NCBI RefSeq assembly: GCF_964188315.1
Contig: NC_135658.1
Location: 11,036,001-11,100,000 of the forward strand
Direction of reading: 5' to 3'
Source of the DNA: Podarcis muralis
Lineage: Eukaryota
Length of the DNA stretch: 64,000 nucleotides
Shown here: one piece after another, positions 27,907 through 60,406 of the stretch
How positions within the stretch are numbered: the stretch's first letter is position 1
How the letters are laid out: every line of letters begins with the position of its first letter
The notes under the pieces: model-generated
What the model was told of the DNA's origin: nothing
Databases searched by the model: none
What the model saw: the letters and a program-made list of their open reading frames with translations, nothing else
Translations under genes and position numbers: made by a program

Positions 27907-28296
27907 TCAGCAGAGATGAATTTCGCCCTGGTTAATCTGCCCCATAATTTCATTGTATTTGGAGGTGACGGCATTGGCTCTCCTTGTCAGCTGTGCGAGG
28001 ACACGATACAAGCTGGACACGTGGTAATAGAAATAGCCTTCAGGGTTCTGCTTCTCTTTCTCTTCCTGTTCTTTCAGACGGCTGGCGACATCAGGGTTCT
28101 GGTTACTGAGAGGCAACAGGCCACCTTCCACCACCAGCTTGATGGATTTCAGCAGCGTGTAATAATCATACAGATCTTTGCCGCCCGAGTCAGCCTCAGG
28201 CGTGTTGTCCTGCCATTCCAAGGGGACGCCCTGGAGAACGCTGGGGAACATCACCGTTTGCTCCATCTTGCGGACTGCAGAGAAGTAATCTTCCAT
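27907..28296 (-). CDS. THRSP: THRSP-1, thyroid hormone responsive Spot14 protein, 129 aa (MEDYFSAVRKMEQTVMFPS...)
   Basis: Spot14 family motifs (MEQxVMFPS, DLY..Y.LLK, QLTRRA..VT.KY); Kozak accATGG at 28296; the ORF-track 5' extension overlaps the promoter. Confidence 0.95.
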   Translation of the reverse strand: MEDYFSAVRKMEQTVMFPSVLQGVPLEWQDNTPEADSGGKDLYDYYTLLKSIKLVVEGGLLPLSNQNPDVASRLKEQEEKEKQNPEGYFYYHVSSLYRVLAQLTRRANAVTSKYNEIMGQINQGEIHLC

Positions 28297-28766
28297 GGTT
28301 GCGAGAGGAGAGACTTCTTTGAGCCTAAAACCTCGGGGGATCTCAGGACCGTTAGATGTGAGCGTTCCTTGCTTCCAGTTGGTGTGGCAATTTATGAGCA
28401 AGCCTGGGTGGAAACCAGCCGTGGAACGTGTGATCAGGAAGAGGTCCATTGGAGCGGTGGACAACACCCCTCTGTCCTCAGCCAATCACATTTCTCCTCC
28501 TCTGGCATCTCATCAGTTGTCTCCTATGTGGTTAGCAATGTGACTTTATTTACAGGTTGGAATGAACCCAAATTAGAGGTGGACTGATTGACCCCAGTTG
28601 AAGCCAGGACTTGCTGATCAATAACTGACAAGTCATGATGTGCAGAGTGGAAAACACCAGGCCAAATCAAGCAATATTTATTCCCAGGGTTTCAGAATCA
28701 CTGGAGGACAAAAAAACAGGCTTGCAATAACTACATGGAGAGCCATTGCTACTCCTGAAGGCAGAG

Positions 28767-29396
28767 TGTGCTGGGCCCGGGGTAACCCGTGAAACGCGGT
28801 CCAGGACCGGTCCAGAATCCGAAGGTTCTGCTAGGAGTCAGTCCAACAGGCCCGAGGCAGGACATGAGGCAGGAAACCAGGCAAGGACAGGTACAGGATC
28901 TCAGGCAGGATCTAGCATACAGCAATGTTGCTCCTGCAACCTGGGGCGGGGTCCGACAGCCTTTTATCTTTGTCAGGGTAGCGGCCGGGCCTGATCCCCC
29001 AGCGACTCACCTCCCTGTTTTGCCCGGAGGCGAGCACTCCTCCTGCGAGTACTCAGGTCTCTCCTTCTCTCAGACCTGAGTCTCTGCAGCTCGGGAGACG
29101 TCGGTGGGTTACTAGACCCAGGGGCCGCCTCAGCCTCCCCTGACCCAACCGGTAGTGGAGCAGCTGTAAGTGATGGCCCAGCTGGAGGCAACGAGGTCAT
29201 CCCCGCATCTGGAGCCAGGGCAGGTTCAGGCCCCTGACTCGACCCAGCTGATGTTTGTTGCAGGGGAACATGTGCAGACTGGGACTCTTCAGGATCAGCC
29301 CCCAGACTTGGTTCAGATGATGCCTGAGGCAAAGGATCCGGTGCGGACTGAGACTCCTCTGGTTCCGAGTCCAAGCCCAAGTCCCAGGCCATCACA
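28767..29396. mobile_element. Solo LTR (630 bp)
   Basis: TGTG...CACA termini; 5-bp TSD CAGAG (28762-28766 and 29397-29401). Confidence 0.8.
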
Positions 29397-29818
29397 CAGA
29401 GAAGTATTGAATGCTCTTAATGCAGGCATCCCCAAACTCGGCCCGCCAGATGTTTTGGAAGTCCAACTCCCACCATCCCTAGCTAACAGGACCAGTGGTC
29501 AGGGATGATGGGAACTGTAGTCCCAAAACATCTGGAGGGCCGAGTTTGGGGATGCCTGGCTTAACCCATGCTTGATCTTTCACCAATTCATAGAACCTTA
29601 GAGTTGGAAGGGGCCCTGGGGGTCATGTAGTCCAACCCCTGCAATGCAGGAATCTCAGCTAAAGCATCCACGACAAATGGCCATCCAACCTCTGTTTAAA
29701 AACCTCCAAGGAAGGACAGTCCACCACCTCTTGTGAAACAGCTCCCCTGTTCCACTGCTGAACAGCTCTTACTGTCAGAAAGTTTTTCTCCTTTCTTGCA
29801 GCTTGAAACCATTGGTTC

Positions 29819-30429
29819 TATCATGGTTTGGTTCACAGGCGATCAAAGTCCCGGCAGGGGACGTCAGGACCGGGGGCAAGATGGCGGGGTGAGAGCAGGA
29901 ACGGGGGTCCAGAAGCCAGGAGTCGAGAAGCCAAGAATCCGAGGGTCAGAGAACTGGGAGTCAAGAAGCCAAGGGTCCGAGGGTCAGGAAGCAAGGGGTC
30001 ATGAAGTCAGGGGTCCGAGGGTCAGGAAGCAAGGAGACACGAAATCAGGGGTCCAAGGATCAAGAAGCAAGGAGTGAAGAAGTTAAGGGTCTGAGGATCA
30101 AGAAGCAAGGAGTCACGAAGTCAGGGGTCCAAGGATCAAGAAGCAAGGAGTCAAGAAGTCAAGGGTCTGAGGATCAAGAAGCCGAGGTTCAAGGATCAGG
30201 AAGCAAGACGCCAAACGCAGCAAGGCAGGGAACGTGTTGCTGTGGCAAAGAGCAGAAGGGGAATGCTGACCTTATATCCCTTCCTGGCTCTTGCCACCAG
30301 GTGCAGTGAGTTACCAAGTGGCCTCACCTGTGTGGCCGCGCCTTGCCTCTCCAGAACAAACTTAGGAAGGCCCCAGTCCTGCAAAGTCCTATTGGTCACA
30401 GGGCCTGGCTCCTGCACGCACACCTGACA
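29819..30429. mobile_element. Solo LTR (611 bp) with an internal minisatellite, inserted in a CR1 fragment
   Basis: T(A)TCATGG...CCTGACA termini; 5-bp TSD GGTTC (29814-29818 and 30430-30434); the CR1 sequence is continuous across the site. Confidence 0.75.
29905..30225. repeat. Minisatellite (about 38-bp unit, CAAGAAGCAAGGAGTCACGAAGTCAGGGGTCCGAGGAT-like)
   Basis: Visible tandem array inside solo LTR 29819-30429. Confidence 0.85.
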
Positions 30430-30519
30430 GGTTCGAATCCTACCCTCCAGAACGGGAGAAAACAAGCTTGCTCCCTCCTCCATGTGACAGCCCTTCAGAT
30501 ATTTGAAAATGGCTACCCT

Positions 30520-31100
30520 AGCTCTGCAGATGGTGACAGCAGTCACAAAATTAAAAGATGCCTGCTTCTTAGGAGAAAAGCAATGACAAACCTAGAAAGC
30601 ATCTTAAAAAGCAGAAACATCACCTTGCCAACAAAGGTCTGTATAGTTAAAGCTATGGTTTTTCCAGTAGTGATGTACGGAAGTGAGAGCTGGACCATCA
30701 AGAAGGCTGATTGCCGAAGAATTGATGCTTTTGGATTATGGTGCTGGAGGAGACTCTTGAGAGTCCCATGGACTGCAAGAAGATCAAACCTATCCATTCT
30801 TAAGGAAATCAGCACTGAGTGTTCACTGGAAGGACAGATCCTGAAGCTGAGGCTCCAAGACTTTGGCCACCTCATGAGAAGAGAAGACGCCCTGGAAAAG
30901 ACCCTGATGTTGGGAAAGATGGAGGGCACAAGGAGAAGGGGATGACAGAGGACAAGATGGTTGGACAGTGTTCTCGAAGCTACCAGCATGAGTTTGACCA
31001 AACTGCGGGAGGCAGTGGAAGACAGGAGTGCCTGGCGTGCTCTGTTCCATGGGGTCACGAAGAGTCAGACACGACTAAATGACTAAACAACAACAACATC
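30520..31100 (+). mobile_element. RTE-BovB LINE 3' fragment
   Basis: ITLPTKVCIVKAMVFPVVMYGSESWTIKKAD...; (CAA)n tail; other copies at 36010-36460 (+), 54645-55050 (-), 56330-56690 (+). Confidence 0.9.
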
Positions 31101-33342
31101 CTATCTCCTCTCAGTCTCCTCTTTTCCAGGCTAAACATACCCAGCTCTTTCAAGTGCTCCTTAGAAGCAGTGCTGTAGGATAGCCACCTCTGAATATCAG
31201 CATACCAGTTTCTACCTCCTCTCTTTCAAAAGACTGTGATTATTATTTTTTAAAGTTGTGCAATGGGAAGGAAGGGAATAGAGAACACCGTTGCATGCTA
31301 GCTTGAAAACATGCCCACATTGTTATGTGCAAAAGTGCACTGGGAGATAAAGGACCCCTGTTTATTTCAAATGATATGTGTGCGCACAGCCTAAATCGGT
31401 GGTGAGAGGGCGATCTGGCTGCGACATCTGTCACCCCATTGATCGCCAGGGTTCATCTGGCTATGCCATAGTCAATGGGCATAGCCCACGAAGCAGAGGA
31501 GCCTTCAGTGAGAGCATATTGGGGCATTGCACAGTGCTTATTGTTCAAACAGGGGTGTTACAAGCTATTTCCATCTGTGAAATGTTGGAAGGGGCAGGGA
31601 CAACTACATGGCCAAGGCAGCAATCCTAGAATCAGGGACTTGAGCAGTGCCAGATTTACATATGAACTAAAGAAGGTATAGCTTAGGGTCCCACTCTCTT
31701 GGGGGGCCCGAAAAAAATTAAAGAAAAAAAAGCACTGGATGTACATTTCCAAAATATAAGATAAAAAACAAATAAAATAAAACCTACATACAGCAACAGT
31801 GTTTTGTATTGTGTAGGCTCCTATGATGTAAGTAATGGCCTGCTAGCCTGCTAGCCCGCTCCCTCAAATATCACTGGTTTGCTCATTTCTATATATAGGG
31901 TGCCTACATTCTGCATGTGCAAATGGCTTTAGATAGCTATTAGGTCCATAAATTACCATATAGCATATATTCACCACAAAAAACAGTGACAATTTGTTGT
32001 TGACAAAGGGCAGCTGGACATATAAAGGGCCCCATTACTTTCAGTAGCATAGGGCCTCATCAAACCTAAATCCAGCCCTGGACGTGAGTCCCGAACAGGG
32101 ACAGACTCAACAAAAATCTTGGTTTGATGTTACGGGAAGGTATACTAACATTTCTGGAAGACACACAGCTCTGTGGTATCACATGTGTTTTCCATGCAGG
32201 AGGTTCCAGGATTGATGCCCAGTACAGTGGTACCTCAGGTTACAGACACTTCAGGTTACAGACTCCGCTAACCCATAATAGTACCTCGGGTTAAGAACTT
32301 TGCTTCAGGATGAGACCAGAAATCGTGCTCCGGCGGCGCAGCAGCAGCAGGAGGCCCCATTAGCTAAAGTGGTGCTTCAGGTTAAGAACAGTTTCAGGTT
32401 AAGAACGGACCTCTGGAATGAATTAAGTACTTAACCCGAGGTATCACGGTATCTCCAGGCAGGGCTGGGAAGAACTCCCTGTCTGAAATCCTGGAGAGCC
32501 CCTTGGCAAAAACCCTCTTGGGGACCTTTCCTGACAGGCAAGGAGCAGTCCTCCTGTGAGGCAGCCATTTTGATTTATGCCCCTAACATGAAGTTGCTCC
32601 ATGGAAAATTAAAAGGGCTGCCTCTAACTTAGGGCCCATTCACTCTTTGCTTGTTCTGGGATTTTTTTAGTCACGGGTCGTCTGAGAGGTTTTTGTCCCT
32701 TCACTTAAGCAGGGAAATCCCATTTGATGCTTGTTCCAATTCAGCAGTAAACATCAGATTTTCCCAGTAAAAACGGCAGAGGGGGGAAAAAATCTCTCAG
32801 ACCCATGACTAGAAACCAGGTAGGGTTCAATATTTCAAAAAGTAAAAATCTGGACACAAAAGCTTTCTCTTTTTTTGACAAAGTTGGCGAGCTTTTTTTT
32901 GGTTTCCCATTGGCCAAAGTTGTTGAGTTTTATTGGCAAATCCTTTTTTAAAAAAAAGTTTTTGAGCTATTTTTTTTAGGAAATTTGCCAAAAATTACCC
33001 CACTTCCGATACAGGCTTCCATACGCCTGGATTTTCCAGGACATCTTAAAAGATTTCTGAAAATTGCGCCCGGACGCTGTTTTCAGTGGAAATTGTGGAT
33101 GTACCCTTAATCACACAGCAACACACACACAAAAAGGCTGAATTGTGGGCAGGGTACTGATGCCCTTCATTTCCTTACAGGAGCCATGTGGTGGCACAGA
33201 GCTTATCTCCAGTGAATATGATTTCAGATAGCAAGCATAATAGGCAAAGACTCCGGATGAGAGCCATTACCTGTCAGGGTAGTTGACAAATACAGGACTA
33301 GATGAAACAGTGGTCTAGGCAGCTTCAAACAATGCAAAATGC

Positions 33343-33697
33343 TTTATTAGTCTGAACTAAAAGCAATATTTAAACACCAGAAAGCAATGGAAACCCAAGG
33401 CATACGTTTGCAATGGAGTTTATAGATATCAGTTTTGTCCATAAATACCATACAGATAGCCATTTTGTTCACAAATATAATATAGATAGGAATTATGTTC
33501 ACAAATATAATATAGATAGGAATTACGTTCACAAATATCAGTGCTTGGCTTATTCAAGTAAAGTCCATGCTACACAACGTTGTGGGGTAGATGCTGCAGT
33601 CAAGGTCTCTAGATTGTCCATTGAGAGCCTTCGTTGCGCAGCCTCAGACAGAGGACCCAAGTTGTACACATGTGCAGGTACAGAAATTCAGGTTGTC
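33343..33697 (-). other. Non-coding exon 2 (3'UTR) of THRSP-2
   Basis: ttttacag acceptor at 33698, AATAAA at 33343-33348; mirrored in THRSP-3. Confidence 0.7.
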
Positions 33698-34399
33698 CTG
33701 TAAAACGGAAAATGGAAAAGGTGTTAACATGGTGGGTTGTGTCTTAATTTAAACCAAGGGTCCCTGTGACTCAGCCCTAGAACTTTACTGATAGCCAACA
33801 TGGGGTTCTCCTGATTTTATTGGGGTACTACAACTCCCATATTCCAGTCAAGTTGACCAATGGTCAGGAATGATGGGAGTTCTAGTCCGGCAACATTGGA
33901 AAGGCACCACGTTAGCTTAGCTTTCCACTTAATAAATAGCCTGAATCCCCAAACTAAGGCCTGAAATATGAATGAAGTAATATAAGATTACCCTCACCAC
34001 CGAAAGATGGACCTGCCATGTCAGAAAATGGCATTCCGTAGCCCAGCCTGTGTTGACCTGGTGGCTACAACTTCCCTCATCCACAGCCAACAATGGCCAC
34101 CAAATTAACCAGGAAGGAAGGAAGAGTTTGCAAGCCTATTTTTAAAAGCTCTTTGACTCTGTTAACAGGCAGTGCCGCAACAGGAGACTACAGTACGGTG
34201 GTGCAAAATCACCTTTTATCACATCCACTTCTATTGGCTGATGGTGGCAATGTGGAAAGTTTAAAAGCGTGGATGCATACAAACATGGAAGGAACGCAGA
34301 ATGTTTGATGCAGGAAACCAGCTGATAGAGCCTTCCACAAGCTGTGCCCACCAGATGTTTTTGACCACGGTTCCCATAGTCATGTTGGCTGCGCTTTAA

Positions 34400-34752
34400 A
34401 AAGGTAAAGAGACCCCTGATCGTTAGGTCCAGTCATGGCCCACTCTGGGGTTGTGGCACTCATCTCGCTTTGTTGGCTGAAGGGGGCCGGCGTACAGCTT
34501 CCAGGTCATGTGGCCAGCAGGACTAAGCCGCTTCTGGCAAACCAGAGCAGCGCACGGAAACACCGTTTACCTTCCCTCCGGAGCGGTACCTATTTATCAA
34601 CTTGCACTTCACGTGCTTTCGAACTGCTAGGTTGGCAGGAGCTGGGACCGAACAACGGGAGCTCACCCCGTTGCGGGGATTCAAACCATCAACCTTCTGA
34701 TCAGCAAGCCCAAGAGGCTCTGTGGTTTAACCCACAGCGCCACCCGCGTCCC
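34400..34752 (-). mobile_element. Sauria SINE in the THRSP-2 intron (orthologous to 49052-49400 in THRSP-3)
   Basis: Same insertion point in both arms; shared diagnostic tail aacgatcaggggtctcttt. Confidence 0.9.
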
Positions 34753-34835
34753 ATTGGCTGGGCTTAGGGGAGAACAATAGGTGGGAGAAGGCCGAGTGAG
34801 CCGATAACTCACCTTTGGTGTCCTTGGCGTGTGTC

Positions 34836-35231
34836 TCACCAGCGGAGAGAGATTTCGTTCTGGTTGATCTGCCCCATGATTTCATTATATTTCGAAGTCA
34901 CGGCGTTGGCCCTCCTTGTCAGCTGGGTGAGGACGCGGTGCAAGCCAGACACGTGGTAATGGAAGAGATCTTCCAGATCAGCCTTCTCTTTGCTCTCCTC
35001 TTCCTTGAGGCTGGGATTCTGGAAGTCAAGAGGTGCTAAGCCACCCTCTGCCCTCCCCTTGATGGCTTTTAGCAGAGTGTAATCTTCATACAGGTCTCTC
35101 TCGCTGGAGTCTCCGTTGCTCGAGTTGGTCTCAAATGTTTCAGCCTGGTCTTCCAAGGAGACTCCAAGGAGGAGGCTGGGAAACATCACCGTTTGCTCCA
35201 TCTTGCGGACGGCAGAGACGTATCTTTCCAT
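34836..35231 (-). CDS. THRSP: THRSP-2, 131 aa (MERYVSAVRKMEQTVMFPSLL...)
   Basis: Spot14 motifs; gccATGG Kozak; TATATAAA at 35346-35353; GTGAGT donor 23 nt after the stop. Confidence 0.95.
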   Translation of the reverse strand: MERYVSAVRKMEQTVMFPSLLLGVSLEDQAETFETNSSNGDSSERDLYEDYTLLKAIKGRAEGGLAPLDFQNPSLKEEESKEKADLEDLFHYHVSGLHRVLTQLTRRANAVTSKYNEIMGQINQNEISLRW

Positions 35232-36422
35232 GGCGATGGGTCGAGAGGGAGTCTCCGGATCTGAATTTGACTTCTTTTTCAGGGTCCCAATCTGCGCTGT
35301 GCAGGAAAGGTGAGCTGTGTTAGGTTTCAGCCTTGCTGGTGGCAATTTATATAGCAATCTTGGTCACTTCCAGAAAGCCTGAGTGGGATAGTTCCATGCC
35401 AGTTCCGGACCCTCCTTTCCCAGGGAGCCAATCCCAGCTTCCCGTGAATTGCAAGAATTTGGCAGTGACTCGTCTGTGGGTTGCAATGTGATTTTATTTA
35501 CAGTCTGGATTCTTTCCCAAACTCTTTTGCCCATATCAGCGACTTGGCATAAAGTTGGACGCTTGCGTGTTCGGGTTGCCTCCCACCCCCATAATGAAAG
35601 AGAGAGAGACCTAAATTAAGTAATCACCAAGACTGGTACTAAATTAAACAGTTTTTGGCAAGCCACACTGCTGGCAAACCACAGAAAGACTGCCTTGGAT
35701 GGTATTGCATAATTTGCACTCAGTTTGTGATAGCTGGGTCCTGCCACCATCTTGCTGTGGGGCACGTGAAGCAGAGATCTTGCAGACTGTCTTCAAACCA
35801 CAGGGCCGGAAAAAGATGTTTGGCAAGCAACCTAAGTCTGGGAATCCACGTCCGGTCTGAACATCTATACAGGGTCAAGGGCTGGGCACGAGTCTTTAGC
35901 CCAGTCTCCTCTCTGTTTAGACTTCTAATTTCAGGGACTTGGGCAGAGGTCTGTCTTGCCACCCGCAACATGAAGATGCCAGATGGAAGTAATATTTAGT
36001 GGCTAACCCCAGCAGTGATGTATGGAACTGAGAGCTGGACCATAAAGAAGGCTGATCGCCGAAGAATTGATGCCTTTGAATTCTGGTGCTGGAGGAGACT
36101 CTTGAGAGTCCCATGGACTGTAAGAACAAACCGATCCATCCTGAAGGAAATCAGCCCTGAGTGCTCACTGGCAGGACAGATCCTGAAGCTGAGGCTCCAA
36201 TACTTTGGCCACCTCATGAGAAGAGAAGGCTCCCTGGAAAAGACCCTGATGTTGGGAAAGATGGGCACAAGGAGAAGGGGACGACAGAGGACGAGATGGT
36301 TGGACATTGTTCTCAAAGCTACCAGCATGAGTTTGACCAAACTGCGGGAGGCAGTGGAAGACAGGAGTGCCTGGCGTGCTCTGGTCCATGGGGTCACGAA
36401 GAGTTGGACACGACTAAATGAC

Positions 36423-36466
<44 letters not shown>

Positions 36467-37070
36467 TTATTATTTGTACCCCACCCATCTGGCTGGGTTT
36501 CCCCAGCCACTCCGGGCACCTTCCAACAAAGATTAAAAATACATCAAAATGTCATACATTAAAAACTTCCCTGAACAGGGCTGCCTTCAGATGTCTTCTA
36601 AATGTCAGGTAGTTCTTTATCTCCTTGACATCTGATGGGAGGGCGTTCCACAGGGTGGGAGCCAGTGTGGTGTAGTGGTTAAGAGCAGTAGTCTCGTAAT
36701 CTGGGGAACCGGGTTCGCGTCTCCGCTCCTCCACATGCAGCTGCTGGGTGACCTTGGGCCAGTCACACTTCTTTGAAGTCTCTCAGCCCCACTCACCTCA
36801 CAGAGTGTTTGTTGTGGGGGAGGAAGGGAAAGGAGAATGTTAGCCGCTTTGAGACTCCTGAAGGGGAGTGAAAGGCGGGATATCAAATCCAAACTCTTCT
36901 TCTTGAGAGCCAGTGTGGTGTAGTGGTTAAGAGCGGTGGACTCGTAATCTGGGGAACCAGGTTCGCTTCCCCGCTCCTCCACATGCAGCTGCTGGGTGAC
37001 CTTGGGCCAGTCACACTTCTCTGAAGTCTCTCAGCCCCACTCACCTCACAGAGTGTTTGTTGTGGGGGAG

Positions 37071-37277
37071 TTACAGATAGGTAGCCGTGTTGGTCTGCCA
37101 TAGTCAAAACAAAAAAAATTCCTTCCAGTAGCACCTTAAAGACCAACTAAGTTAGTTCTTGGTATGAGCTTTCGTGTGCATGGTATCTGAAGAAGTGTGC
37201 ATGCACACGAAAGCTCATACCAAGAACTAACTTAGTTGGTCTTTAAGGTGCTACTGGAAGGAATTTTTTTTGTTTTG
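37071..37277 (+). mobile_element. Penelope-like element terminal fragment with inverted duplication
   Basis: About 15-bp TSD TTTGTTGTGGGGGAG; 78-bp perfect inverted arms; CTGAAGAAG...CGAAAGCTC motif typical of PLE pseudo-LTRs. Confidence 0.75.
37181..37222 (+). ncRNA. Minimal type I hammerhead ribozyme motif
   Basis: UGGUAU-CUGAAGA-A-GUGUGC(AU)GCACAC-GAA-AGCU-C/AUACCA: 6-bp stem I, 6-bp stem II, palindromic AGCU in place of stem III. Confidence 0.7.
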
Positions 37278-40200: not shown

Positions 40201-40682
40201 AGGGAGTTAGAGAAATTCATGTAGGGAACTCAATAGCTACCAGGCCAAAGAGAACCTTGCCTGTAATGACCAGTGGGACGATACTTGGTGCTGGTGTTGA
40301 CCTTTAAAGCCCTAAACGGCCTCGGTCCTGTATACCTGAAGGAGCGTCTCCACCCCCGTCGTTCTGCCCGGACACTGAGGTCCAGCACCAGGACCTTCTG
40401 GAGGTTTCCTCACTGTGAGAAGCAAAGCTACAGGCAACCAGGCAGAGGGCCTTCTCGGTAGTGGCGCCTGCCCTGTGGAACGCCCTCCCATCAGATGTCA
40501 AAGAGATAAACAACTACATGACATTTAGAAGACATCTGAAGGCAGCCCTGTTTGGGGAAGTTTTTAATGTGTGACATTTTGATGTATTTTTAATCCTAGT
40601 TGGAAGCCGCCCAGAGTGGCTGGGGAAACCCAGCCAGGTGGGTGAATAATAAATAATAATAATTATTATTATTATTATTATT

Positions 40683-40732
<50 letters not shown>

Positions 40733-41463
40733 CGTCAGACATGTCTTTGGTGGCAGGTAATCGAGCCAGCCAGCTCCAGAAGGGCAACTGTGTCCATTTA
40801 TTGCAGCAAGGAACAGCATTGTGCTGCATGGGGTAGTTGACAAGATGTCATGGACTGGCTGGATTGCAGAGGGTTAGGTGAAAGCCAGATGTCCAGTGCC
40901 AATTTGCCAAATGGAAAAATTCCTGCCTGGCCCCAAATACGGCGGCCGACTAAGTCCTTAGAAAAGTCAAAACGTCAGTAAAAGCAATCAAATTCAGGGT
41001 GGGTAGGTGGGAGATCGGACAAAAGAGCAGGGAAGACTGCCAGGCAGGCCACAATTTAACACCCCATGGAGTGGGCCCACGCGTCCTCATTGGCTGGTTG
41101 TGCCCGCCGTCAGAGGAAAGCCTATTCAAGGTCTACTGGCATTGGCAAATAGCCGGCAGCCAGGTGATCCCAGCTGCCATTTGCTGGATCACTTGCGTGG
41201 CCCGCGGCCTGGACGTGACACCACCCACCGCAGAAGGTGAGCGGACGTCCTCTAACTCTCCACTTTTCCAGACTAAACCTGCCCAGCTCCTTCAACTGTT
41301 CCTCATCAGACCTGGTTTCCAGACCCTTGATCATCTTGGTTGCCCTCCTCTGCACATGTTCCAGCTTGTCAATATCCTTCTTAAATTGATCCTTATTATT
41401 GAAATGTTTGCCGCCTTGTTTCCTTCAGGAGGAAGGGTGGGATATAAATTAAAATAATAGTAA

Positions 41464-41515
<52 letters not shown>

Positions 41516-44500
41516 GGCCCAGCTACAGGAAGAAGAAACCCTCTAGTTTTCCCATTATGAACGCAGGACTTGCTTGTCTCTTTCAGTTTTAGGAACAAAA
41601 ACCCTGCAGAGGGACATTCCGAAGGCCTTTAGCGAGGTATTTTTATATGCAACAAATGCAGCTCGGATTTTGGTGGCAAAGGAGTGGAAGGAAGAAGAAG
41701 TCCCGACAATAACGGACTGGCATAACAACCTGCAAGAATTTGCTGAAATAGCGCAGTTGACAAATAGCCTGAGAGGCAATTCAAAGCAAAAATTTATGGA
41801 AAAGTGGGATAGATATAAGATATATGTTAAAAAAAATACAGTAAAGGTTCGCTATCTATGCTAGCATTCGATTGATGTTGGAGAGAGACTGAGTTGAGAC
41901 ATAAGAACAAGGGTACATAACGATATAGGAATGTATTAGATAAAATGTAAAGAAATATACAATAATAAGAGTACAGTGGTACCTCGGGTTAAGTACTTAA
42001 TTCGTTCTGGAGGTCCGTTCTTAACCTGAAACTATTCTTAACCTGAAGCACCACTTTAGCTAATGGGGCCTCCTGCTGCCGCTGTGCCACCGCCGCACGA
42101 TTTCTGTTCTCATCCTGAAGCAAAGTTCTTAACCCCAGGTACTATTTCTGGGTTAGCGGAGTCTGTAACCTGAAGTGTATGTAACCTGAAGCGTATGTAA
42201 CCCGAGGTACCACTGTATATTCATTTGTAAAAAAGGAATATACAACGGAATAGGCAGGAAGTCCAAAGTGTTGGTACATATATGATTTTGGAATAGTTTT
42301 TTGTCCCTGTTTCTTTTTCTTTTAGTATATAAACTTTGTATACATGTTGAAAATTATAGTATAATAAGCCTTGTGACGTAATATGAGAATGCTTACTGAG
42401 GTAACATAAGAACTTTAATAAATAAAATTTTTAAAAAGGAACAAAAACCCTGCAGAGATGAAATCTCCCTTCACCTTATTTTCCTGCCTTGCATCAGCTC
42501 TCTTCCAGTGCCCTATGGTCTGTTGGCAATGAAGAACCGCAGACACAGCTGAACATTTCGTGTTCTGGCAGAAGGGTTTCCAAAGTGTTTGGCCCATGCA
42601 ATGCTGAGTGCTGCTTGGGCCAAAACGAATGGGTCAAAAGGAAATGGGCGCCATGCAACTTTTCACTCATCGAGACAAATTTCCCCATCTCTGGAGAGGG
42701 GTCTTGCTCCAAAGTGGCAGACGATTTCGCCAGCGCTCATCCTAACGCCCAGCACAGCTCTTGTCTATTATCCAGCATTTGCAAAATTGCGTGGCCTTGC
42801 CGAGTCCCAGTGAAAGGGTCAAAGCAGTAGGCACAGTTCAGTTCTATTTTGGGGAGATCTGTAAATAAAGCCACACTGTTAGCTGCCAAGAAAGGAAACA
42901 GTTGCCTCATATGTTCAAGGATAAAGGTTGCGATTGCCTAAAACGGTGCTAGGGTAGTGTCTTTTTCTTGGCACTGAACCCGTCCTGATCACTCGTTGGG
43001 TGACTGAGCTCCATCCAGTCTTCTTTTCTTTTTTGAAAATAATTTTTATTTGGTTCTACAGATTTAAGATTATAATCATACCACATCAATCAATAGATTT
43101 TATTGCGTTAGCCGTGTGGCCATAGCATGATATACATAGAAATAACAACATAAAATGGGGGTGGGGAGATAAAGGTAGATATCGTCCCACATCAAATCCA
43201 CAGTTAAAAGATTCCTCCAAATCTCTGGACTTCCCACCCTCCCCTCCTTGGGTTCTGTTGTTCCCCCTTTTCTGTTGCATCTTTCCCTCATAAACCAAGT
43301 TTTTTGTAACTCCATTATATCCCTAGTTTTCATTACAGTGGTACCTCGGGTTACAGACGCTTCAGGTTACATACGCTTCAGGTTACAGACTCCGCTAACC
43401 CAGAAATAGTACCTTGGGTTAAGAACTTTACCTCAGGATGAGAACAGAAATTGCGTGGCAGCAGCGGGAGGCCCCATTAGCTAAAGTGGTGCTTCAGGTT
43501 AAGAACAGTTTCAGGTTAAGAACGGACTCCGGAACGAATTAAGTTCTTAACCTGAGGTACCACTGTACATTACATGTGTTATTGCAGTCCTGCTAGTGTT
43601 TTCAGCTGTTTATAGTGGTCTTCCAGGTAAATTATAATTTTTCCCCATTCCTTATTAAAGTTTTGGTCTTCCTGGTTTCTGAGCTTCCCAATCAATTTTG
43701 TCATAATCCATCAACATGATCTGCCATTCTTCTCTAGTAGGGACTTTATCTTCTTTCCATCTCTGAGCTAACAGCATCCATGCAGCTGTCGTCACATACA
43801 TAAGAAGTATTTTCTGCTCCCTTGGAATTTCAGCACCTACAATTCCTAATAGAAAAGCGTCTGGGTTTTTTAAATAAAAGTTATTTTAAACATTTTTTCC
43901 AATTCATTATATATCATTTCCCATAATGCTTTTATTACCTTACACGTCCACCACATAGGATAAAAGGTGCATTCTTTCTCTTTACATTTCCAGCAGATAT
44001 TTATACCTGTCTTGTACATTTTTGCTAACTTACTAGGGTTATATATCACTGGTACATCATTTTCCTGTACAGTGGTACCTCGGGTTAAGAACTTGATTAG
44101 TTCTGGAGGTCCGTTCTTAACCTGAAACTGTTCTTAACCTGAGGTACCACTTTAACTAATGGGGCCTCCCGCTGCCGCCACACGATTTCTGTTCTTATCC
44201 TGAAGCAAAGTTCTTAACCCGAGGTACTATTTCTGGTTTAGCGGAGTCTGTAACCTGAAGCGTCTGTAACCTGAGGCGTCTGTAACCTGTGGTAACACTG
44301 TAATTTTCTTTCAATGTACAGCATGCCGAGAATGTCAAATCTGTATTCTTTAACCTCTCCCAAGATGAGAGCTGGATATTATGTCCCAAATCCCTTGCCC
44401 ATTATATCATTACAGATTTAACCTGTTCAACCTTTGTGTGCCATTCCAAAATCTATCTTCCATCCAGTCTTGCTGCATACATTGTCCTCAATAAGTCTGG

Positions 44501-44576
44501 AAGATTTAACTACTCTCACCACTTACAGCCCACCTTGAATTGCATTTGGCACCTCAAGATACCTGTAAGCTGTAGA

Positions 44577-44980
44577 CCAGGGGTCGCCAACCTAAGGCCC
44601 ACGGGCTTGGAGCAACCCACGGAGGCTGTTTAACAGGCCCACAAGCCACCCCCGAACAGAGCCGCCCGCTCAGCGAGTCCCCACACAATGCGCTAAACCA
44701 CCGCAGCGCAGGGACTCTCTTCTGTGGCTCCGGAAATTGCTTCTGCGCATCCCCAGACTCTGGAAATCGCATCTGCGCATGTCTGCGGTTCCGGAAATCG
44801 CTTCTGGGCATGCCCAGACACAGAAAATCGCTTCTGCACAGGCACAATTTTCAGCATCTGGGCATGCGCAGAAGCGATTTCTGGCACTTCGGACATGCGC
44901 AGACGCGATTTCTGGCGTCACGCTGTGCCAGCCTGGCCCACGGAGGATCTCCGCGGGAGTGATCTGGCCCATGCCCTTGC
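44577..44980. mobile_element. hAT MITE (CAGGGGTCGGCAACC family) directly upstream of the THRSP pseudogene
   Basis: Terminus and internal GCGCAGAAGCGATTTCCGG repeats shared with copies at 2305-2550 and 3929-4292. Confidence 0.75.
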
Positions 44981-45012
44981 TGTAGACACAGGGAAAATCT
45001 CACCTCCTAGCT

Positions 45013-45505
45013 ATGGGAGGTTCCTTCTCTGCTGTGCAGAAGATGGAGTAGCTTCGGAAGAGCCAGACGACACATTTGAAGCTGACTCTGATGGGGGCCA
45101 AAAGTGACGCAGGTGGCGCTGTGGGTTAAACCACAGAGCCTAGAACTTGCCGATCAGAAGTTCGGCGGTTCAAATCCCTGCGGAGGGGTGAGTGCCCGTT
45201 GTTCAGTACCTGCTCCTGCCAACTGAGCAGTTCAAAAGCACGAAGTGCAAGTAGATAAACAGGTACCGCTCCGGCGGGAAGGTAAATGGCATTTCCGTGT
45301 GCTGCTCTGGTTCGCCAGAAGCGGCTTAGTCAAGCTGTCTGCGGACAAACGCCGGCTCCCTCGGCCTATAGAGCGAGATTAGCGTGCAACCTCAGAGTCG
45401 GTCACGACTGGACCTAATGGTCAGGGGTCCTTTTACTGATGGTGGCCAAGAGCTGTATGAATATTACACACAGGTGAAATCCACGAAGCAGTCAGCAGAA
45501 GACAT
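45013..45505 (+). pseudogene. THRSP: THRSP pseudogene (THRSP-1-like) with a premature stop, an internal deletion and a SINE insertion
   Basis: ATG GGA GGT TCC TTC TCT GCT GTG CAG AAG ATG GAG TAG aligns to THRSP-1 ATG GAA GAT TAC TTC TCT GCA GTC CGC AAG ATG GAG CAA; then EPDDTFEADSDGGQ, a SINE, then ELYEYYTQVKSTK (THRSP-1: DNTPEADSGGKDLYDYYTLLKSIK). Confidence 0.85.
45103..45436 (+). mobile_element. Sauria SINE inserted into the THRSP pseudogene
   Basis: TSD TGATGG(G/T)GGCCAA at 45089-45101 and 45437-45449. About 15 further Sauria SINE copies, e.g. 9433-9850, 12268-12590, 23482-23860, 27410-27755, 38960-39282, 52303-52650, 62910-63210. Confidence 0.9.
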
Positions 45506-45566
45506 TCACGAGGGGTTCAAAAACGAGGAAGCGGTTTTGTGCTGCTGTGAGGTCCTCCATCCTATA

Positions 45567-45998
45567 CAGTGGTGCCTCGCAAGACGAAAAGAATCCGTTC
45601 CGCGAGTCTCTTCGTCTTGCGGTTTTTTCGTCCTGCGAAGCAAGCCCATTAGCGGATTAGCGGATTAGCGCTATTAGCGGGCTTAGCGGATCAGCTGATA
45701 AGCGGCTTAGCGGATCAGCTGATTAGCGGCTTAGCGGATCAGCTGTTAAGCGGCTTAGCGGATCAGCTGATAAGCGGCTTAGCGATCAGCTGTTAAGCGG
45801 CTTAGCGGATCAGCTGATAAGCGGCTTAGCGGCTTGGGGAAAAGGGGAGGGGGAACCCTGCAGGAACTCGCAAGACATTTTCGTCTTGTGAAGCAAGCCC
45901 ATAGGAAATTCGTTTTGCGAAGCACCTCCAAAACGGAAAACCCTTTCGTCTAGCGGGTTTTCTGTCTTGCGAGGCATTCGTCTTGCAGGGCACCACTG
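45567..45998. mobile_element. Tc1/pogo-type MITE, family B, with an internal (GCGGCTTA/GCGGATCAGCTG) tandem array
   Basis: CAGTGGTGCC..GCAAGACGAA TIRs, TA TSD; copies at 2555-2893 and 20168-20522. Confidence 0.85.
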
Positions 45999-46559
45999 TA
46001 CTCAGGTTGCATATAGGTGTTTCTTTCTGCTGCTGGTTTCCATGGCATCTTTGGGGAGGGGCAAGATGTTGCAGGAGACCTCTGCCCCAGGCCCTGAAGA
46101 GGCTATGGACGTGCCAGTCAGAATAGATGGAACCGGGCTAGATGAACAAGTTGCTTGATCTGGGGCTAAGGCATCTTCTATTGCATCTTCCAGCCCTTGC
46201 CCTGACCCTGACCATGTATCAGTGTTCAGAGGGGAGCTGGATTTCCAGACTGAAGCCATTGCCAAACATCTTTGCCCACAAAATCTCTGCTTCTCATGAC
46301 CCCCGCAAAATGGTAGTATGAACCATCTATCACAAACGGAGCCCAAATTATGCAATCATTCTCCTGGCACCCTCCCTGTGCTTGCTGAAGGCCAGGAAAG
46401 TGCCTTGCCAAACGTTGTTAGGAAATTTCCATTCAGTGCAAGCCCAGATTATAGCTTGATTTAGATTTCTCTGCCTCTCTCTGATTATTGGTCAGAATTG
46501 TGGAGCTGGAAGGGACTTTCAGAACGTTCTAGTCCAGCTCTTACCACCAGAAAGTTCCT

Positions 46560-48245
46560 CCTGATGTTTAGTGGACTCTCTGTTCTTGTAACTTGAAGTC
46601 ACTGGTTCAAGTCCCACCCTCCAGAGCAGGAGAAAACCAGCTTGCTCCATCTTCAATGTGACAGCCTTTCGGATATTTGAAGAAGGCTGTCATATCTCCC
46701 CCTCAGTCTCCTCTTTTTCCAGGCTAAGCATACACAGCTCCTTCAACCGTTCCTCATCAGACCTGGTTTCCAGATCCTTGATCATCTTGGTTGCCCTCCT
46801 CTGCACACCTTCCAGCTTGTCAACATCCTTCTTAAATTGTGGTGCCCAGAACTGGACACAGGACTCCGGGTGTGTTCTGACCAAGGCAGAATAGAGTGGG
46901 ACTATTACTTTCCTTGATCAGGACACTAGACCTCTTGATGCAGCCTAGAATAGGATTAGCTCTTTTTGCTGCTGCATCACGTGGTTGACTCATGCTAAGC
47001 TTGTGGTCCACCAAGACCCCTAGATCCTTTTCACATGTACTGCTTGCGAGACAGATGTTCGCCTTCATAAATTACTGCAGTTGATTATTCCTGCCTTACA
47101 TTTCTCCCTGTAGAAATTCATTTTGTTAGTTTTGGCCCAATTCTCCAATCTGTTAAGGTCATCTTGAACCCTGATTCTGTCTTCTGCAGCATTAGCTACC
47201 CCTCCCATTTTGGTGTCATCTGCAGATTTGATGAGTATCCCCTCAGTTCCTTTGTCCAAGTCATTTAAAAAGAGGTTGAACAACAATGGGCCCAGTACAG
47301 AACCCTGCGGCACCCCACTCGGCACTTATTTCCAGGATGATAAAAAGGTAAAGGTACCCCTGCCCATACGGGCCAGTCTTGCCAGACTCTAGGGTTGTGC
47401 GCCCATCTCACTCAAGAGGCCGGGGGCCAGCGCTGTCCGGAGACACTTCCGGGTCACGTGGCCAGCGTGACAAGCTGCATCTGGCGAGCCAGCGCAGCAC
47501 ACGGAACGCCGTTTACCTTCCTGCTAGTAAGTGGTCCCTATTTATCTACTTGCACCCGGGGGTGCTTTCGAACTGCTAGGTTGGCAGGTGCTGGGACTGA
47601 GCGACGGGAGCGCACCCCGCCGCGGGGATTCGAACCGCCGACCTTTCGATCGGCAAGTCCTAGGCACGGAGACTTTTACTCACAGCGCCACCCGCGTCCC
47701 TCCAGGATGATAAGGAACCATTAATGAGCACTCTTTGGGTTTGGTCAGTCAACAAGCTACAAATCCACCTAAAAGTTACCTCATCCAGCCCACAATTTAC
47801 CCACTTCTCTGGGTTATCATGGGGGACCTTACTGAAATCAAGATACAGTGGTACCTCGGGTTAAGTACTTAATTCGTTCTGGAGGACTGTTCTTAACTTG
47901 AAACTGTTCTTAACCTGAAGCACCACTTTAGCTAATGGGGCCTCCCGCTGCCGCTGCACGATTTCTGTTCTCATCCTGAAGCAAAGTTCTTAACCTGAGG
48001 TAACATTTCTGGGTTAGTAGAGTCTGTAACCTGAAGCGTATGTAACCTGAAGCGTATGTAACCCGAGGTACCACTGTACATTATGTCCACTGCGTCCCCC
48101 TGATCCACCAAGTTTGTAACTCTATCAAAGAAAAAAGTGAGATTTGTCTGACATGACTTGTTTTTGAAAAACCCATGCTAGGTCTTAGTAATCACAGCAT
48201 CCATTTTGAAGTGTGCTCAGACTGACTGTTTAATTATCTGTTCAA
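46560..48245 (-). mobile_element. CR1 LINE fragment interrupted by a Sauria SINE and a Tc1/pogo MITE
   Basis: CR1 RT-region translations (GVPQGSVLGPLLFN, ADDTK); other CR1 pieces at about 29.6-30.5k, 41.2-41.4k, 63.2-63.5k. Confidence 0.85.
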
Positions 48246-48279
48246 GGACCCTGGTGGCAAGTAGCTGATAGAGGCAAAA

Positions 48280-48470
48280 GGGTTTGAGAAAGAATCTGGG
48301 AAAGAATCCAGACTGTAAATAAAATCACATTGCAAGCCACAGACGAGTCACTGCCAAATTCTTGCAATACACGGGAAGCTGGGATTGGCTCCCTGGGAAA
48401 GGAGGGTCTGGAACTGGCATGGAACTATCCCACTCAGGCTCTCTGGAAGTGACCAAGATTGCTATATAAA
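48280..48470 (+). promoter_or_regulatory. THRSP-3 proximal promoter: forkhead-like and C/EBP-like block, inverted CCAAT (48384-48388), TATA (48463-48470)
   Basis: Motifs visible in the sequence; mirrored at 35346-35530 and partly conserved at 28388-28560. Confidence 0.7.
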
Positions 48471-48584
48471 TTGCCACCAGCAAGGCTGAAACCTAACACA
48501 GCTCACCTTTCTTGCACAGCGCAGATTGGGACCCTGAAAAAGAAGTCAAATTCAGATCCGGAGAATTCCTCTCGACCCATCGCC

Positions 48585-48980
48585 ATGGAAAGATACGTCT
48601 CTGCCGTCCGCAAGATGGAGCAAACGGTGATGTTTCCCAGCCTCCTCCTTGGAGTCTCCTTGGAAGACCAGGCTGAAACATTTGAGACCAACTTGAGCAA
48701 TGGAGACTCCAGCGAGAGAGACCTGTATGAAGACTACACTCTGCTAAAAGCCATCAAGGGGAGGGCGGAGGGTGGCTTAGCACCTCTTGACTTCCAGAAT
48801 CCCAGCCTCAAGGAAGAGGAGAGCAAAGAGAAGGCTGATCTGGAAGATCTCTTCCATTACCACGTGTCCGGCTTGCACCGCGTCCTCACCCAGCTGACGA
48901 GGAGGGCCAACGCCGTGACTTCTAAATATAATGAAATCATGGGGCAGATCAACCAGAACGAAATCTCTCTCCGCTGGTGA
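48585..48980 (+). CDS. THRSP: THRSP-3, 131 aa, one amino acid different from THRSP-2 (S37L)
   Basis: Inverted near-identical copy of THRSP-2; TATATAAA at 48463-48470; GTGAGT donor at 49004. Confidence 0.95.
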   Translation: MERYVSAVRKMEQTVMFPSLLLGVSLEDQAETFETNLSNGDSSERDLYEDYTLLKAIKGRAEGGLAPLDFQNPSLKEEESKEKADLEDLFHYHVSGLHRVLTQLTRRANAVTSKYNEIMGQINQNEISLRW

Positions 48981-58049: not shown

Positions 58050-58099
58050 TCAGCGAATTGGATGGAAATTCTCCAGAACTTCTGCCATGCGTTTCTTTT
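58050..58099 (-). CDS. NDUFC2: NDUFC2 exon 3 coding part (EKKRMAEVLENFHPIR*); total protein 115 aa
   Basis: Manual translation; C-terminal FHPIR as in human; tttttatag acceptor; ATTAAA at 57905-57910 followed by a GU-rich stretch. Confidence 0.95.
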
Positions 58100-59600: not shown

Positions 59601-59601
59601 A

Positions 59602-60361: not shown

Positions 60362-60406
<45 letters not shown>

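What the first reader, a model, noticed from the sequence alone, without database searches (positions are those of the whole stretch)
27907..48980. Four-member THRSP (Spot14) cluster: three intact genes and one pseudogene
Seen: THRSP-1 (-), THRSP-2 (-), a pseudogene (+) and THRSP-3 (+). THRSP-1 is about 65% identical in protein to THRSP-2/3 (manual alignment), while THRSP-2 and -3 differ by one residue. Established: mammals have a single THRSP here and chicken has two (alpha and beta); Spot14 regulates lipogenesis through MID1IP1/ACC. Inference: repeated birth-and-death expansion of a lipogenic regulator in lizards, possibly tied to fat-body or yolk lipid cycles.
Basis: partly seen in the sequence, partly recalled or inferred. 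Interest (0 to 1): 0.75.

Follow-up and report, generated by a model that had tools for sequence, protein, structure and literature searches.

The report
Spot14 gene cluster with converting palindrome
A wall-lizard chromosome carries three working copies and one dead copy of the fat-synthesis regulator Spot14 (THRSP). The two near-identical copies are not a recent duplicate but an old mirror-image pair that keeps overwriting itself by gene conversion.

Summary
Three intact single-exon Spot_14 (PF07084) coding sequences of 129, 131 and 131 aa and one relic lie next to NDUFC2, the THRSP position. T1 is about 65% identical to T2 and T3. T2 and T3 differ by one residue, from 7 nucleotide differences of which 6 are synonymous.

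The interpretation needs revision in four respects.
- The T1 versus T2/3 split is old. Many squamates carry three paralog types (A, B, C) in the same order; Rhineura has all three intact.
- The pseudogene is the positional ortholog of type C, dead since before Podarcis and Lacerta split.
- T2/T3 is one ancient inverted duplication of B, shared by Podarcis, Lacerta and Zootoca. A 2.3-kb core spanning the whole transcription unit is kept 95-99% alike within each species by arm-to-arm gene conversion. The unconverted shell just upstream is only about 73% alike and groups by copy, not by species.
- A Podarcis-specific SINE sits at the same intron site in both arms, and Zootoca has the spacer flipped.

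Independent assemblies of four species show the arrangement, so an assembly artefact is excluded. Transcript contigs show a GT..AG intron in the 3'UTR and both T2- and T3-type letters.

The genes are already annotated, often misnamed MID1IP1-like. The history appears undescribed. It is a clean textbook case of moderate interest. The scan noted a similar converting palindrome elsewhere in this genome.

The parts
27907..28296 (-). T1, the type-A THRSP paralog. Complete 129-aa CDS in one exon. A likely splice donor lies 27 nt after the stop.
   Evidence: - ORF and translation.
- Pfam Spot_14 E 1.6e-30.
- Identical to protein P0067, already called in this genome.
- Orthologues in 5 lacertids.
- Donor-like context after the stop.
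33225..35527 (-). T2 arm of the inverted repeat (the converted core). It holds the core promoter, exon 1, the intron and exon 2 of T2.
   Evidence: - Self-BLAST: 2304 nt, 94.6% identical to 48289-50574.
- Same splice sites, TATA-like box and poly(A) signal as T3.
34836..35231 (-). T2, the type-B THRSP paralog and the parental copy. Complete 131-aa CDS.
   Evidence: -.
- Equals P0075.
- Its flanks beyond both repeat ends align with the single B gene of Rhineura.
35528..35893 (-). Distal upstream region of T2, outside the converted core (the old shell of the duplication).
   Evidence: - Aligns with Rhineura B upstream.
- Only about 69-73% identical to its copy at 46020-46494.
42487..43022 (+). 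Conserved non-coding block that lies just upstream of the intact type-C gene in Rhineura and Elgaria.
   Evidence: - 70.7% over 566 nt to Rhineura, E 1e-70.
- 67% over 322 nt to Elgaria.
-.
45013..45505 (+). Pseudogene, the relic of paralog C. It has a start codon and 12 codons, then a stop. It lacks the 10 most conserved codons (a 31-nt deletion shared with Lacerta). A SINE was inserted at about 45098-45436. A middle piece lies at 45438-45500. The C-terminal third is not recognisable.
   Evidence: -.
- Nucleotide identity to Rhineura C is 85.7-86.8%, against 80-82% to T1 and 74-80% to T2.
- Position and orientation match gene C of Elgaria and Rhineura.
46020..46494 (+). Diverged copy of the B distal upstream region that came with T3 (the old shell of the duplication). 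TE insertions now separate it from the T3 core.
   Evidence: - 66.6% over 530 nt to Rhineura B upstream, E 1e-44.
- Groups with the same block of P. raffonei, L. agilis and Zootoca at 100/100 support.
48289..50574 (+). T3 arm of the inverted repeat (the converted core). It comprises a TATA-like box at 48464-48471, exon 1 to 49003, an intron at 49004-50101, exon 2 from 50102, and AATAAA at 50451-50456.
   Evidence: -.
- A spliced contig and reads skip 1098 nt with GT..AG ends.
- Sequence read directly.
48585..48980 (+). T3, the derived inverted copy of type B. Complete 131-aa CDS with Leu37 instead of Ser37.
   Evidence: -.
- Equals P0073.
- A T3-type transcript contig at 48661-48868 has 0 mismatches over 4 diagnostic sites.
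49049..49399 (+). SINE inside the T3 intron. Its twin lies at 34400-34756 in the T2 intron. Both sit at the same site with the same target-site duplication.
   Evidence: Present in both arms of both Podarcis species and absent from both arms of L. agilis and Zootoca, where the site is empty.
58037..61237 (-). NDUFC2 exons, the last two found. This is the syntenic neighbour that marks the THRSP locus.
   Evidence: - Pfam NDUF_C2 E 2.5e-15 for 61088-61237(-).
- Aligns with Elgaria NDUFC2 exons.
- C-terminal exon read by translation.

Best explanation
**What is there.** The window holds the squamate THRSP (Spot14) cluster beside NDUFC2. Squamates inherited three tandem paralogs, arranged A(-), B(-), C(+), then NDUFC2.

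**What happened in lacertids.** In the lacertid stem lineage, a segment of at least 3.3 kb carrying the whole B gene was copied in inverted orientation to just beyond gene C. The segment ran from about 860 nt upstream of the ATG to about 1.6 kb past the stop. This produced T3. Gene C decayed into the pseudogene.

**How the two copies stay alike.** Since then, the 2.3-kb core of the two B copies has repeatedly exchanged sequence by gene conversion between the inverted arms. The core comprises the core promoter, the coding exon, the 3'UTR intron and exon 2. As a result T2 and T3 stay 95-99% alike within each species while diverging between species. The distal upstream part escaped conversion and has diverged to about 73%. 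A crossover between the arms flipped the spacer in Zootoca.

**Function.** All three intact genes are under purifying selection. T2 and T3 both appear to be transcribed as two-exon mRNAs with the intron in the 3'UTR. By homology they would act like Spot14, a small helical dimer that partners with MID1IP1 and modulates acetyl-CoA carboxylase and lipogenesis. That function is inferred and not shown here.
For: **Family and locus**
- Pfam Spot_14 matches.
- Match to the solved mouse Spot14 structure 3ONT, E 7e-17.
- NDUFC2 is adjacent in the window, in Zootoca and in Elgaria.

**Old paralogs**
- The protein tree has a squamate clade (92/93).
- It holds a type-B clade (93/97) that includes gecko, skink, iguanian, anguimorph, snake, teiid, Rhineura and the lacertid T2/3.
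- It holds a type-C clade (93/90) without any lacertid.
- The lacertid T1 copies fall outside both clades.
- A lacertid-only clade is rejected, p-AU 0.02.
- Rhineura carries A, B and C intact in the window's order with no second B. Elgaria shows B(-) C(+) NDUFC2(-).

**Pseudogene equals C**
- The block upstream of Rhineura C aligns collinearly with window 42487-43022 (E 1e-70) and with L. agilis. The 5' CDS of C aligns onto the L. agilis relic.
- The relic is closest to C at the nucleotide level. It shares a 31-nt frame-breaking deletion with P. raffonei and L. agilis.

**One old inverted duplication**
- The same T1(-) T2(-) psi T3(+) layout occurs in P. raffonei, L. agilis and Zootoca.
- The inner repeat boundary lies 296-340 nt before the ATG in all of them.
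- The unconverted upstream shell groups by copy type at 100/99 and 100/100. The two types are about 73% alike and each is about 76% alike to Rhineura. Grouping by species is rejected, p-AU 1e-44.

**Conversion in the core**
- Arms are 97.6-99.7% alike within a species in the upstream and CDS parts, against 93-94% between genera, with no orthology signal.
- The core tree pairs the arms by species or genus at 100/99. A clade of all T2 copies is rejected, p-AU 1.5e-66.
- Species-specific amino-acid changes are shared by both copies.
- A Podarcis-only SINE with its target-site duplication is present in both arms.

**Spacer flip in Zootoca**
- The outer flanks are collinear and the whole spacer is reversed.

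**Selection**
- dN/dS is 0.04-0.5.

**Expression and gene model**
- In run X1, exon depth is 190-670, against 12-18 in the intron and about 5 in intergenic sequence.
- A spliced contig joins 49003 to 50102 with GT..AG ends. Three raw RNA-seq reads support the same junction.
- Contigs carry T3-type letters (depth about 470-535) and T2-type letters (depth about 201).
Against: - The A-type sequences do not form one supported clade in the 130-column protein tree. The affinities of one gecko group and one snake group are unresolved. The exact age of the triplication (all squamates or a subset) is therefore open.
- The AU rejection of a lacertid-only clade is only p = 0.02.
- The sequence affinity of the pseudogene to C rests on fewer than 130 nt. 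Summed protein scores were noisy. Position is the stronger argument.
- Run X1 is only guessed to be RNA. Its tissue and individual are unknown. De Bruijn contigs can mix T2 and T3 letters, so the T3:T2 ratio is rough.
- The two certain RNA-seq runs, X22 and X23, show almost no coverage of the exons.
- Expression of T1 was not examined.
- No function was tested.
Confidence: 0.85

Rival explanations
1. T2 and T3 are a young duplication in this species or genus, which is the natural reading of '98% identical, one residue apart'.
For: - CDS 98.2% identical; the arms 94.6% overall.
- dS between T2 and T3 is only 0.075.
Against: - The same inverted pair, with the same boundaries and flanks, is present in P. 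raffonei, L. agilis and Zootoca.
- The adjoining unconverted part of the duplicated segment is only about 73% alike and groups by copy across all four species.
Confidence: 0.03
2. T2 and T3 are one locus assembled twice, from haplotype duplication or mis-assembly.
For: The arms are near-identical. In a DNA run of another sample, depth over the T3 exon is about single-copy, and the laid contig mixes T2 and T3 letters. This is uninformative either way.
Against: - The arms are inverted, 12.8 kb apart, and have different unique flanks on all four sides.
- They differ by 125 aligned positions, including indels.
- The arrangement recurs in chromosome-level assemblies of three other lacertid species fetched here.
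- P. lilfordi and P. muralis also have two annotated B-type proteins each.
- A contig from another run bridges the inner T3 junction at 48172-48326 with no mismatch.
Confidence: 0.02
3. Independent inverted duplications of B arose separately in Podarcis, Lacerta and Zootoca, so no conversion is needed to explain why the copies pair by species.
For: The core tree pairs the copies by species or genus.
Against: - It requires three events with the same insertion site, orientation and boundaries.
- The upstream shell tree shows two orthologous lineages that predate the genera.
- The SINE shared by both arms in Podarcis only is explained simply by conversion.
Confidence: 0.02
4. Strong purifying selection alone, without conversion, keeps T2 and T3 alike.
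For: dN/dS is low, 0.04-0.4 between the arms.
Against: - The similarity extends to synonymous sites, the 5'UTR, the intron and a 370-nt SINE.
- The two copies share species-specific changes.
- Selection cannot make paralogs group by species at silent and intronic sites.
Confidence: 0.02

Closest known systems
Mammalian THRSP (Spot14), including the solved mouse structure 3ONT
   Same: - Same Pfam family, with a direct sequence match to 3ONT over both conserved helical regions.
- Neighbour of NDUFC2.
- The whole CDS lies in exon 1, with one intron in the 3'UTR. That the mammalian gene has this layout is from my own knowledge.
   Different: - The lizard proteins are shorter, 129-131 aa. They start at the conserved ME.Y motif and lack the roughly 17-residue N-terminal extension of the mouse protein.
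- There are three active genes instead of one.
Chicken THRSPA/THRSPB (bird alpha and beta paralogs)
   Same: A local duplication of THRSP in a sauropsid. The paralogs are thought to act in lipogenesis as dimers with each other and with MID1IP1 (PMC6995218).
   Different: It is an independent event. All bird sequences form one clade (100/100) with two neognath sub-clades, separate from the squamate clade. No evidence was gathered here for an inverted, converting pair in birds.
MID1IP1 (MIG12, S14R), the other vertebrate member of the Spot_14 family
   Same: Same Pfam domain. NCBI names many of these lizard genes 'mid1-interacting protein 1-like'.
   Different: The lizard genes sit at the THRSP locus beside NDUFC2. 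In the tree they fall among turtle, bird and caecilian sequences, most of them named THRSP. The MID1IP1-like names therefore look like annotation slips. No true MID1IP1 sequence was included in the tree, so this rests on synteny and names.
Inverted-repeat (palindrome) gene pairs homogenised by arm-to-arm gene conversion, for example the sex-chromosome palindromes of primates
   Same: - Arms are kept more alike within a species than between species.
- Conversion is limited to a core.
- The spacer is inverted by recombination between the arms.
   Different: This one is small (2.3-kb arms, 8-23 kb spacer), autosomal as far as is known, and holds a single metabolic regulator gene. A diverged shell preserves the true age. 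The comparison with primate palindromes is from my own knowledge.

Membership tests
Spot_14 / THRSP family (Pfam PF07084) | Match to the family profile above the curated cut-off | tested here: met
   T1 scores 106.6 bits, T2 121.5 bits and T3 121.1 bits, against a cut-off of 21. The pseudogene ORF does not match.
Spot_14 / THRSP family (Pfam PF07084) | Sequence relationship to an experimentally solved Spot14 | tested here: met
   3ONT_A 'Spot 14 protein' at E 7.2e-17. Both the N-terminal and the C-terminal helical regions align. No structure was predicted here.
THRSP rather than MID1IP1 | Position next to NDUFC2 | tested here: met
   NDUF_C2 exon at window 61088-61237(-), E 2.5e-15. NDUFC2 is also called next to the cluster in Zootoca and Elgaria.
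THRSP rather than MID1IP1 | Groups with THRSP of other tetrapods in a tree that also holds MID1IP1 | tested here: inconclusive
   The squamate copies sit inside a tetrapod set with turtles, birds and caecilians, most of which carry THRSP names. No bona fide MID1IP1 was retrieved, so the contrast was not made.
THRSP gene structure | Complete CDS in the first exon and a single intron in the 3'UTR | tested here: met
   - A spliced contig and 3 RNA-seq reads join 49003 to 50102 with GT..AG ends, 23 nt after the stop.
- The same sites are conserved in T2, and a like donor follows T1.
THRSP function | Induction by thyroid hormone or carbohydrate; dimerisation with MID1IP1; effect on acetyl-CoA carboxylase | not testable with these tools
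   Known for the mammalian proteins (PMC4283044, PMC12183620). Nothing here tests it for the lizard proteins.
Inverted repeat under concerted evolution | Paralogous arms are more alike within a species than orthologous arms are between species | tested here: met
   - 97.6-99.7% against 93-94%.
- The tree pairs arms by species at 100/99.
- The orthology topology is rejected, p-AU 1.5e-66.
Inverted repeat under concerted evolution | Independent evidence that the duplication is older than the species compared | tested here: met
   The unconverted upstream shell groups by copy type at 100/99 and 100/100, with about 73% identity between types. Flanks and boundaries are conserved.
Inverted repeat under concerted evolution | Discrete transfer of sequence between the arms, or recombination between them | tested here: met
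   - A Podarcis-specific SINE with its target-site duplication lies in both arms.
- The spacer is inverted in Zootoca while the outer flanks stay collinear.

The most novel reading that the evidence does not exclude
The inverted B copy (T3) landed immediately downstream of gene C and functionally replaced it. C's own upstream block (42487-43022) is still as well conserved with Rhineura as the promoters of the live genes. T3 may therefore be expressed under C's former regulatory context, while gene conversion forces it to encode the same protein as T2. In other words, one protein would be held under two different regulatory regimes. In Zootoca the spacer flip would have swapped those regimes between the two copies, providing a natural promoter-swap experiment.
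Probability: 0.15. Interest if true: 0.6.

Novelty: new member of a known kind. Interest (0 to 1): 0.4.

Why it matters
**Dating duplicates.** This is a compact, fully resolved example of how a pair that looks young can be old. The converted core says 'recent', and the unconverted shell 200 nt further on says 'ancient'. That is a useful caution for dating duplicates from coding identity.

**Annotation.** Squamates carry three old THRSP paralogs, which current annotation names inconsistently, often as MID1IP1-like. Lacertids replaced one of them with a second copy of another.

**Physiology.** The locus gives lizard physiologists three distinct lipogenic-regulator genes whose copy-specific expression can be followed in liver, fat body and vitellogenic females.

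**Natural experiment.** Zootoca has the regulatory surroundings of two identical coding units exchanged.

Tried and rejected
- **Summed tblastn scores.** I scored A-, B- and C-type proteins against the relic in four species. The result was noisy and only weakly favoured C. I replaced it with nucleotide comparison and synteny.
- **Extra constraint on the C-upstream block.** I asked whether it is more constrained than its surroundings within lacertids. It is not: 91.2% between the window and L. agilis, against 91-92.5% for neighbouring spacer segments. The left half of the spacer is 83-86%. So there is no specific support for the regulatory-capture idea.
- **GC-biased conversion.** GC3 of the converting copies is 0.67-0.71, against 0.65-0.68 in T1 and 0.60 in Rhineura B. 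The difference is too small and too confounded to claim.
- **Read depth in a DNA run as a copy-number test.** The contigs are de Bruijn paths that mix T2 and T3 letters, and the depth is a contig mean. This is uninformative.
- **Literature search.** The searchable library holds no paper on THRSP in lizards.
- **Steps not needed.** The coding sequences are single exons, so no spliced model had to be joined or searched. The N run at 8401-8531 was left alone.

Full report
**1. What is in the window**

| Copy | CDS from the family-conserved start | Length |
|---|---|---|
| T1 | 27907-28296(-) | 129 aa |
| T2 | 34836-35231(-) | 131 aa |
| T3 | 48585-48980(+) | 131 aa |

- The coding sequences were delimited.
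- All three match Pfam Spot_14 at E 1.6e-30 to 3.9e-35.
- T2 matches the solved mouse Spot14 structure 3ONT at E 7e-17.
- T1 is 64.7-66.2% identical to T2 and T3. T2 and T3 differ only by S37L.
- At the nucleotide level the T2 and T3 coding sequences differ at 7 sites, 6 of them synonymous.
- The window has one N run, 8401-8531, far from the finding. It was left alone.
- NDUFC2 exons lie at 58037-58175 and 61088-61237 on the minus strand, so this is the THRSP locus.
- The three proteins are identical to proteins already called in a public Podarcis assembly (P0067, P0075, P0073).

**2. The pseudogene**

- On the plus strand there is a start codon and 12 codons ending in a stop (45013-45048).
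- A SINE follows at about 45098-45436.
- A 21-codon piece follows at 45438-45500. The pieces are collinear with the family.
- The relic lacks the ten most conserved codons of the family through a 31-nt deletion. P. raffonei and L. agilis share this deletion, so the gene was dead before those genera split.
- L. agilis lacks the SINE and keeps a longer, gapped remnant.

**3. The cluster is old**

- Word and profile searches returned two to three Spot14-family proteins per squamate species. They also returned turtle, bird and caecilian THRSP.
- The maximum-likelihood tree used 89 rows and 130 columns, with caecilians as outgroup.
  - It has a squamate clade (92/93).
  - It has a type-B clade (93/97) that runs from a gecko to the lacertid T2/3, with Salvator and Rhineura as successive sisters of the lacertids.
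  - It has a type-C clade (93/90) with cordylid, anguimorph, python and iguanian members but no lacertid.
  - The lacertid T1 group (100/99) lies with the other type-A sequences in an unresolved part of the tree.
- Holding all lacertid copies together costs 36 log-likelihood units (p-AU 0.02).
- Bird duplicates form their own clade, so the chicken alpha/beta pair is a separate event.
- Gene order agrees with the tree. Elgaria shows B(-) C(+) NDUFC2(-). Rhineura has A, B and C intact in the window's order and orientation, with no second B within 10 kb.

**4. The pseudogene is paralog C**

- The roughly 600 nt just upstream of Rhineura C align collinearly with window 42487-43022 (70.7%, E 1e-70) and with L. 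agilis. The start of the C coding sequence aligns onto the L. agilis relic.
- At the nucleotide level the window relic is 85.7-86.8% identical to Rhineura C. It is 80-82% identical to T1 and 74-80% to T2.
- A protein-score comparison was noisy. Position is the main argument.

**5. T2 and T3 form an inverted repeat shared by lacertids**

- Self-comparison gives arms 33225-35527 and 48289-50574, which are 94.6% alike over 2.3 kb.
- I fetched the loci of the annotated orthologues in P. raffonei, L. agilis and Zootoca.
- All three species show T1(-) T2(-), a spacer holding the relic, then T3(+) and NDUFC2.
- The inner repeat boundary lies 296-340 nt before the ATG in every species.
- P. lilfordi and P. 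muralis also have two B-type proteins each.
- This excludes an assembly artefact.

**6. Concerted evolution of the core**

- Inside the repeat, the arms are 97.6-99.7% alike within a species in the upstream and CDS parts. Between genera they are only 93-94% alike, and T2-T2 comparisons are no closer than T2-T3.
- A DNA tree of the core, rooted with Rhineura B, pairs the arms by species or genus (100/99). A clade of all T2 copies is rejected (p-AU 1.5e-66).
- Both copies share species-specific amino-acid changes.
- A discrete proof comes from a roughly 370-nt SINE with its target-site duplication. It sits at the same intron position in both arms of both Podarcis species. Both arms of L. agilis and Zootoca have the empty site.
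- Homogenisation is tightest in the promoter-proximal and coding part and weaker in the distal 1 kb.

**7. The true age, from an unconverted shell**

- The Rhineura B upstream region, about 360-860 nt before the ATG, aligns with window 35311-35893 next to T2.
- It also aligns, in the orientation expected for T3, with window 46020-46494 (E 1e-44).
- So the original duplicated segment was longer than the present repeat.
- These shells are about 73% alike between copies in every species. They are 88-99% alike between species for the same copy, and about 76% alike to Rhineura.
- Their tree has two clades by copy type (100/99 and 100/100). Grouping by species is rejected (p-AU 1e-44).
- This means one duplication, well before the Podarcis/Lacerta/Zootoca split and after the split from Rhineura.
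- T2 keeps Rhineura-like sequence beyond both ends of the repeat, so T2 is the parental copy and T3 the derived one.
- The far end of the T3 segment lies a few hundred bases from the end of the relic. The duplication itself may have damaged C. This is an inference only.

**8. Spacer inversion in Zootoca**

- The outer flanks of Zootoca are collinear with L. agilis, but the whole spacer aligns in reverse.
- The relic and the T3-type shell now lie next to the T1-side copy. The T2-type shell lies next to the NDUFC2-side copy.
- This is the expected product of a crossover between the inverted arms.
- Rhineura polarises the change. The Podarcis/Lacerta orientation is ancestral.

**9. Selection, gene model and expression**

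- Selection: dN/dS is 0.04-0.41 between arms, 0.12-0.33 for B copies between genera and against Rhineura, and 0.25-0.53 for T1 orthologues.
- Reads were laid on 44900-50600.
  - One run, guessed to be RNA, has depth 190-670 on the exons, 12-18 in the intron and about 5 in unique intergenic sequence.
  - Three reads of two true RNA-seq runs show the same junction, but those two runs barely cover the gene.
- Gene model of T3: the gene has two exons with the intron in the 3'UTR. A TATA-like box lies at 48464-48471 and AATAAA at 50451-50456.
- The repeat therefore spans almost exactly the transcription unit plus the core promoter.
- T2 has the same signals, and T1 has a like donor after its stop.
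- Transcript contigs carry pure T3 letters at four diagnostic sites (depth 535). Elsewhere they carry T2 letters (depth 201 of 671), so both copies appear to be expressed.
- Contigs can mix paralogs, and the tissue is unknown.

**10. Function and comparison**

- Function is inferred from homology. Spot14 is a small helical dimer that pairs with MID1IP1 and affects acetyl-CoA carboxylase and lipogenesis (PMC4283044, PMC12183620, PMC6995218).
- The C-terminal helix that aligns best with 3ONT is nearly invariant among the lizard copies.
- Nothing here tests thyroid-hormone response, partners, or any link to fat bodies or yolk.

**11. Novelty**

- The genes are annotated in several lacertid genomes, often as 'mid1-interacting protein 1-like'.
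- The searchable literature has no paper on THRSP in lizards.
- The mechanism, a converting inverted repeat, is well known.
- I rate this a new member of a known kind: a very clean example, of moderate interest.

Noticed in passing
window 42487-43022: A non-coding block is conserved with the region just upstream of the intact type-C gene of Rhineura (70.7%) and Elgaria (67%), although C is dead in lacertids. Within lacertids it is no better conserved than the neighbouring spacer.
   Followed up: partly
window 37546-41611 versus 42437-48585: The two halves of the spacer differ in divergence from L. agilis. The T2-side half is 83-86% identical and the relic/T3-side half is 91-92.5%. This is unexplained.
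   Followed up: no
window 28297-28449, upstream of the T1 start: NCBI models of T1 in P. muralis and P. raffonei (180 and 185 aa) start at an upstream in-frame ATG. That ATG lies before a TATA-like motif shared with T2 and T3. The extension is absent from other lacertid models and from the Pfam domain, so it is probably 5'UTR or promoter and not protein.
   Followed up: partly
protein P0005 (P. muralis, UniProt A0A670HSS4): This B-type model has an internal replacement and a 5' extension read from the UTR. It looks mis-modelled. Many THRSP-locus genes of squamates and birds are named MID1IP1-like in NCBI.
   Followed up: no
window 30343-31098, 36008-36443, 54641-55046, 56336-56678: These are fragments of a retrotransposon ORF (reverse-transcriptase C-terminal part), 92-95% alike to each other, in both orientations around the cluster.
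   Followed up: no
window 1022-1342, 9463-9845, 12268-12588, 13453-13822, 20941-21308, 23485-23860, 27422-27753, 34400-34756, 38961-39280, 45106-45436, 47341-47707, 49049-49399, 52298-52650: At least 13 copies of one SINE family of about 330-370 nt lie in 64 kb, 75-95% alike. One disrupted the pseudogene, and one was spread to both repeat arms.
   Followed up: partly
L007 (Rhineura floridana) 806-1201(-) and 16885-17262(+): Intact type-C and type-A THRSP genes lie here that were not called as genes in the locus table. Only the B gene is annotated there.
   Followed up: partly
window 48389-48440 and 48563-48584: The P. muralis Ensembl-type model implies a small 5'UTR intron or an alternative upstream start for the B gene. 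The transcript contig in run X1 also starts at 48363, upstream of the TATA-like box at 48464. There may be two start sites.
   Followed up: no
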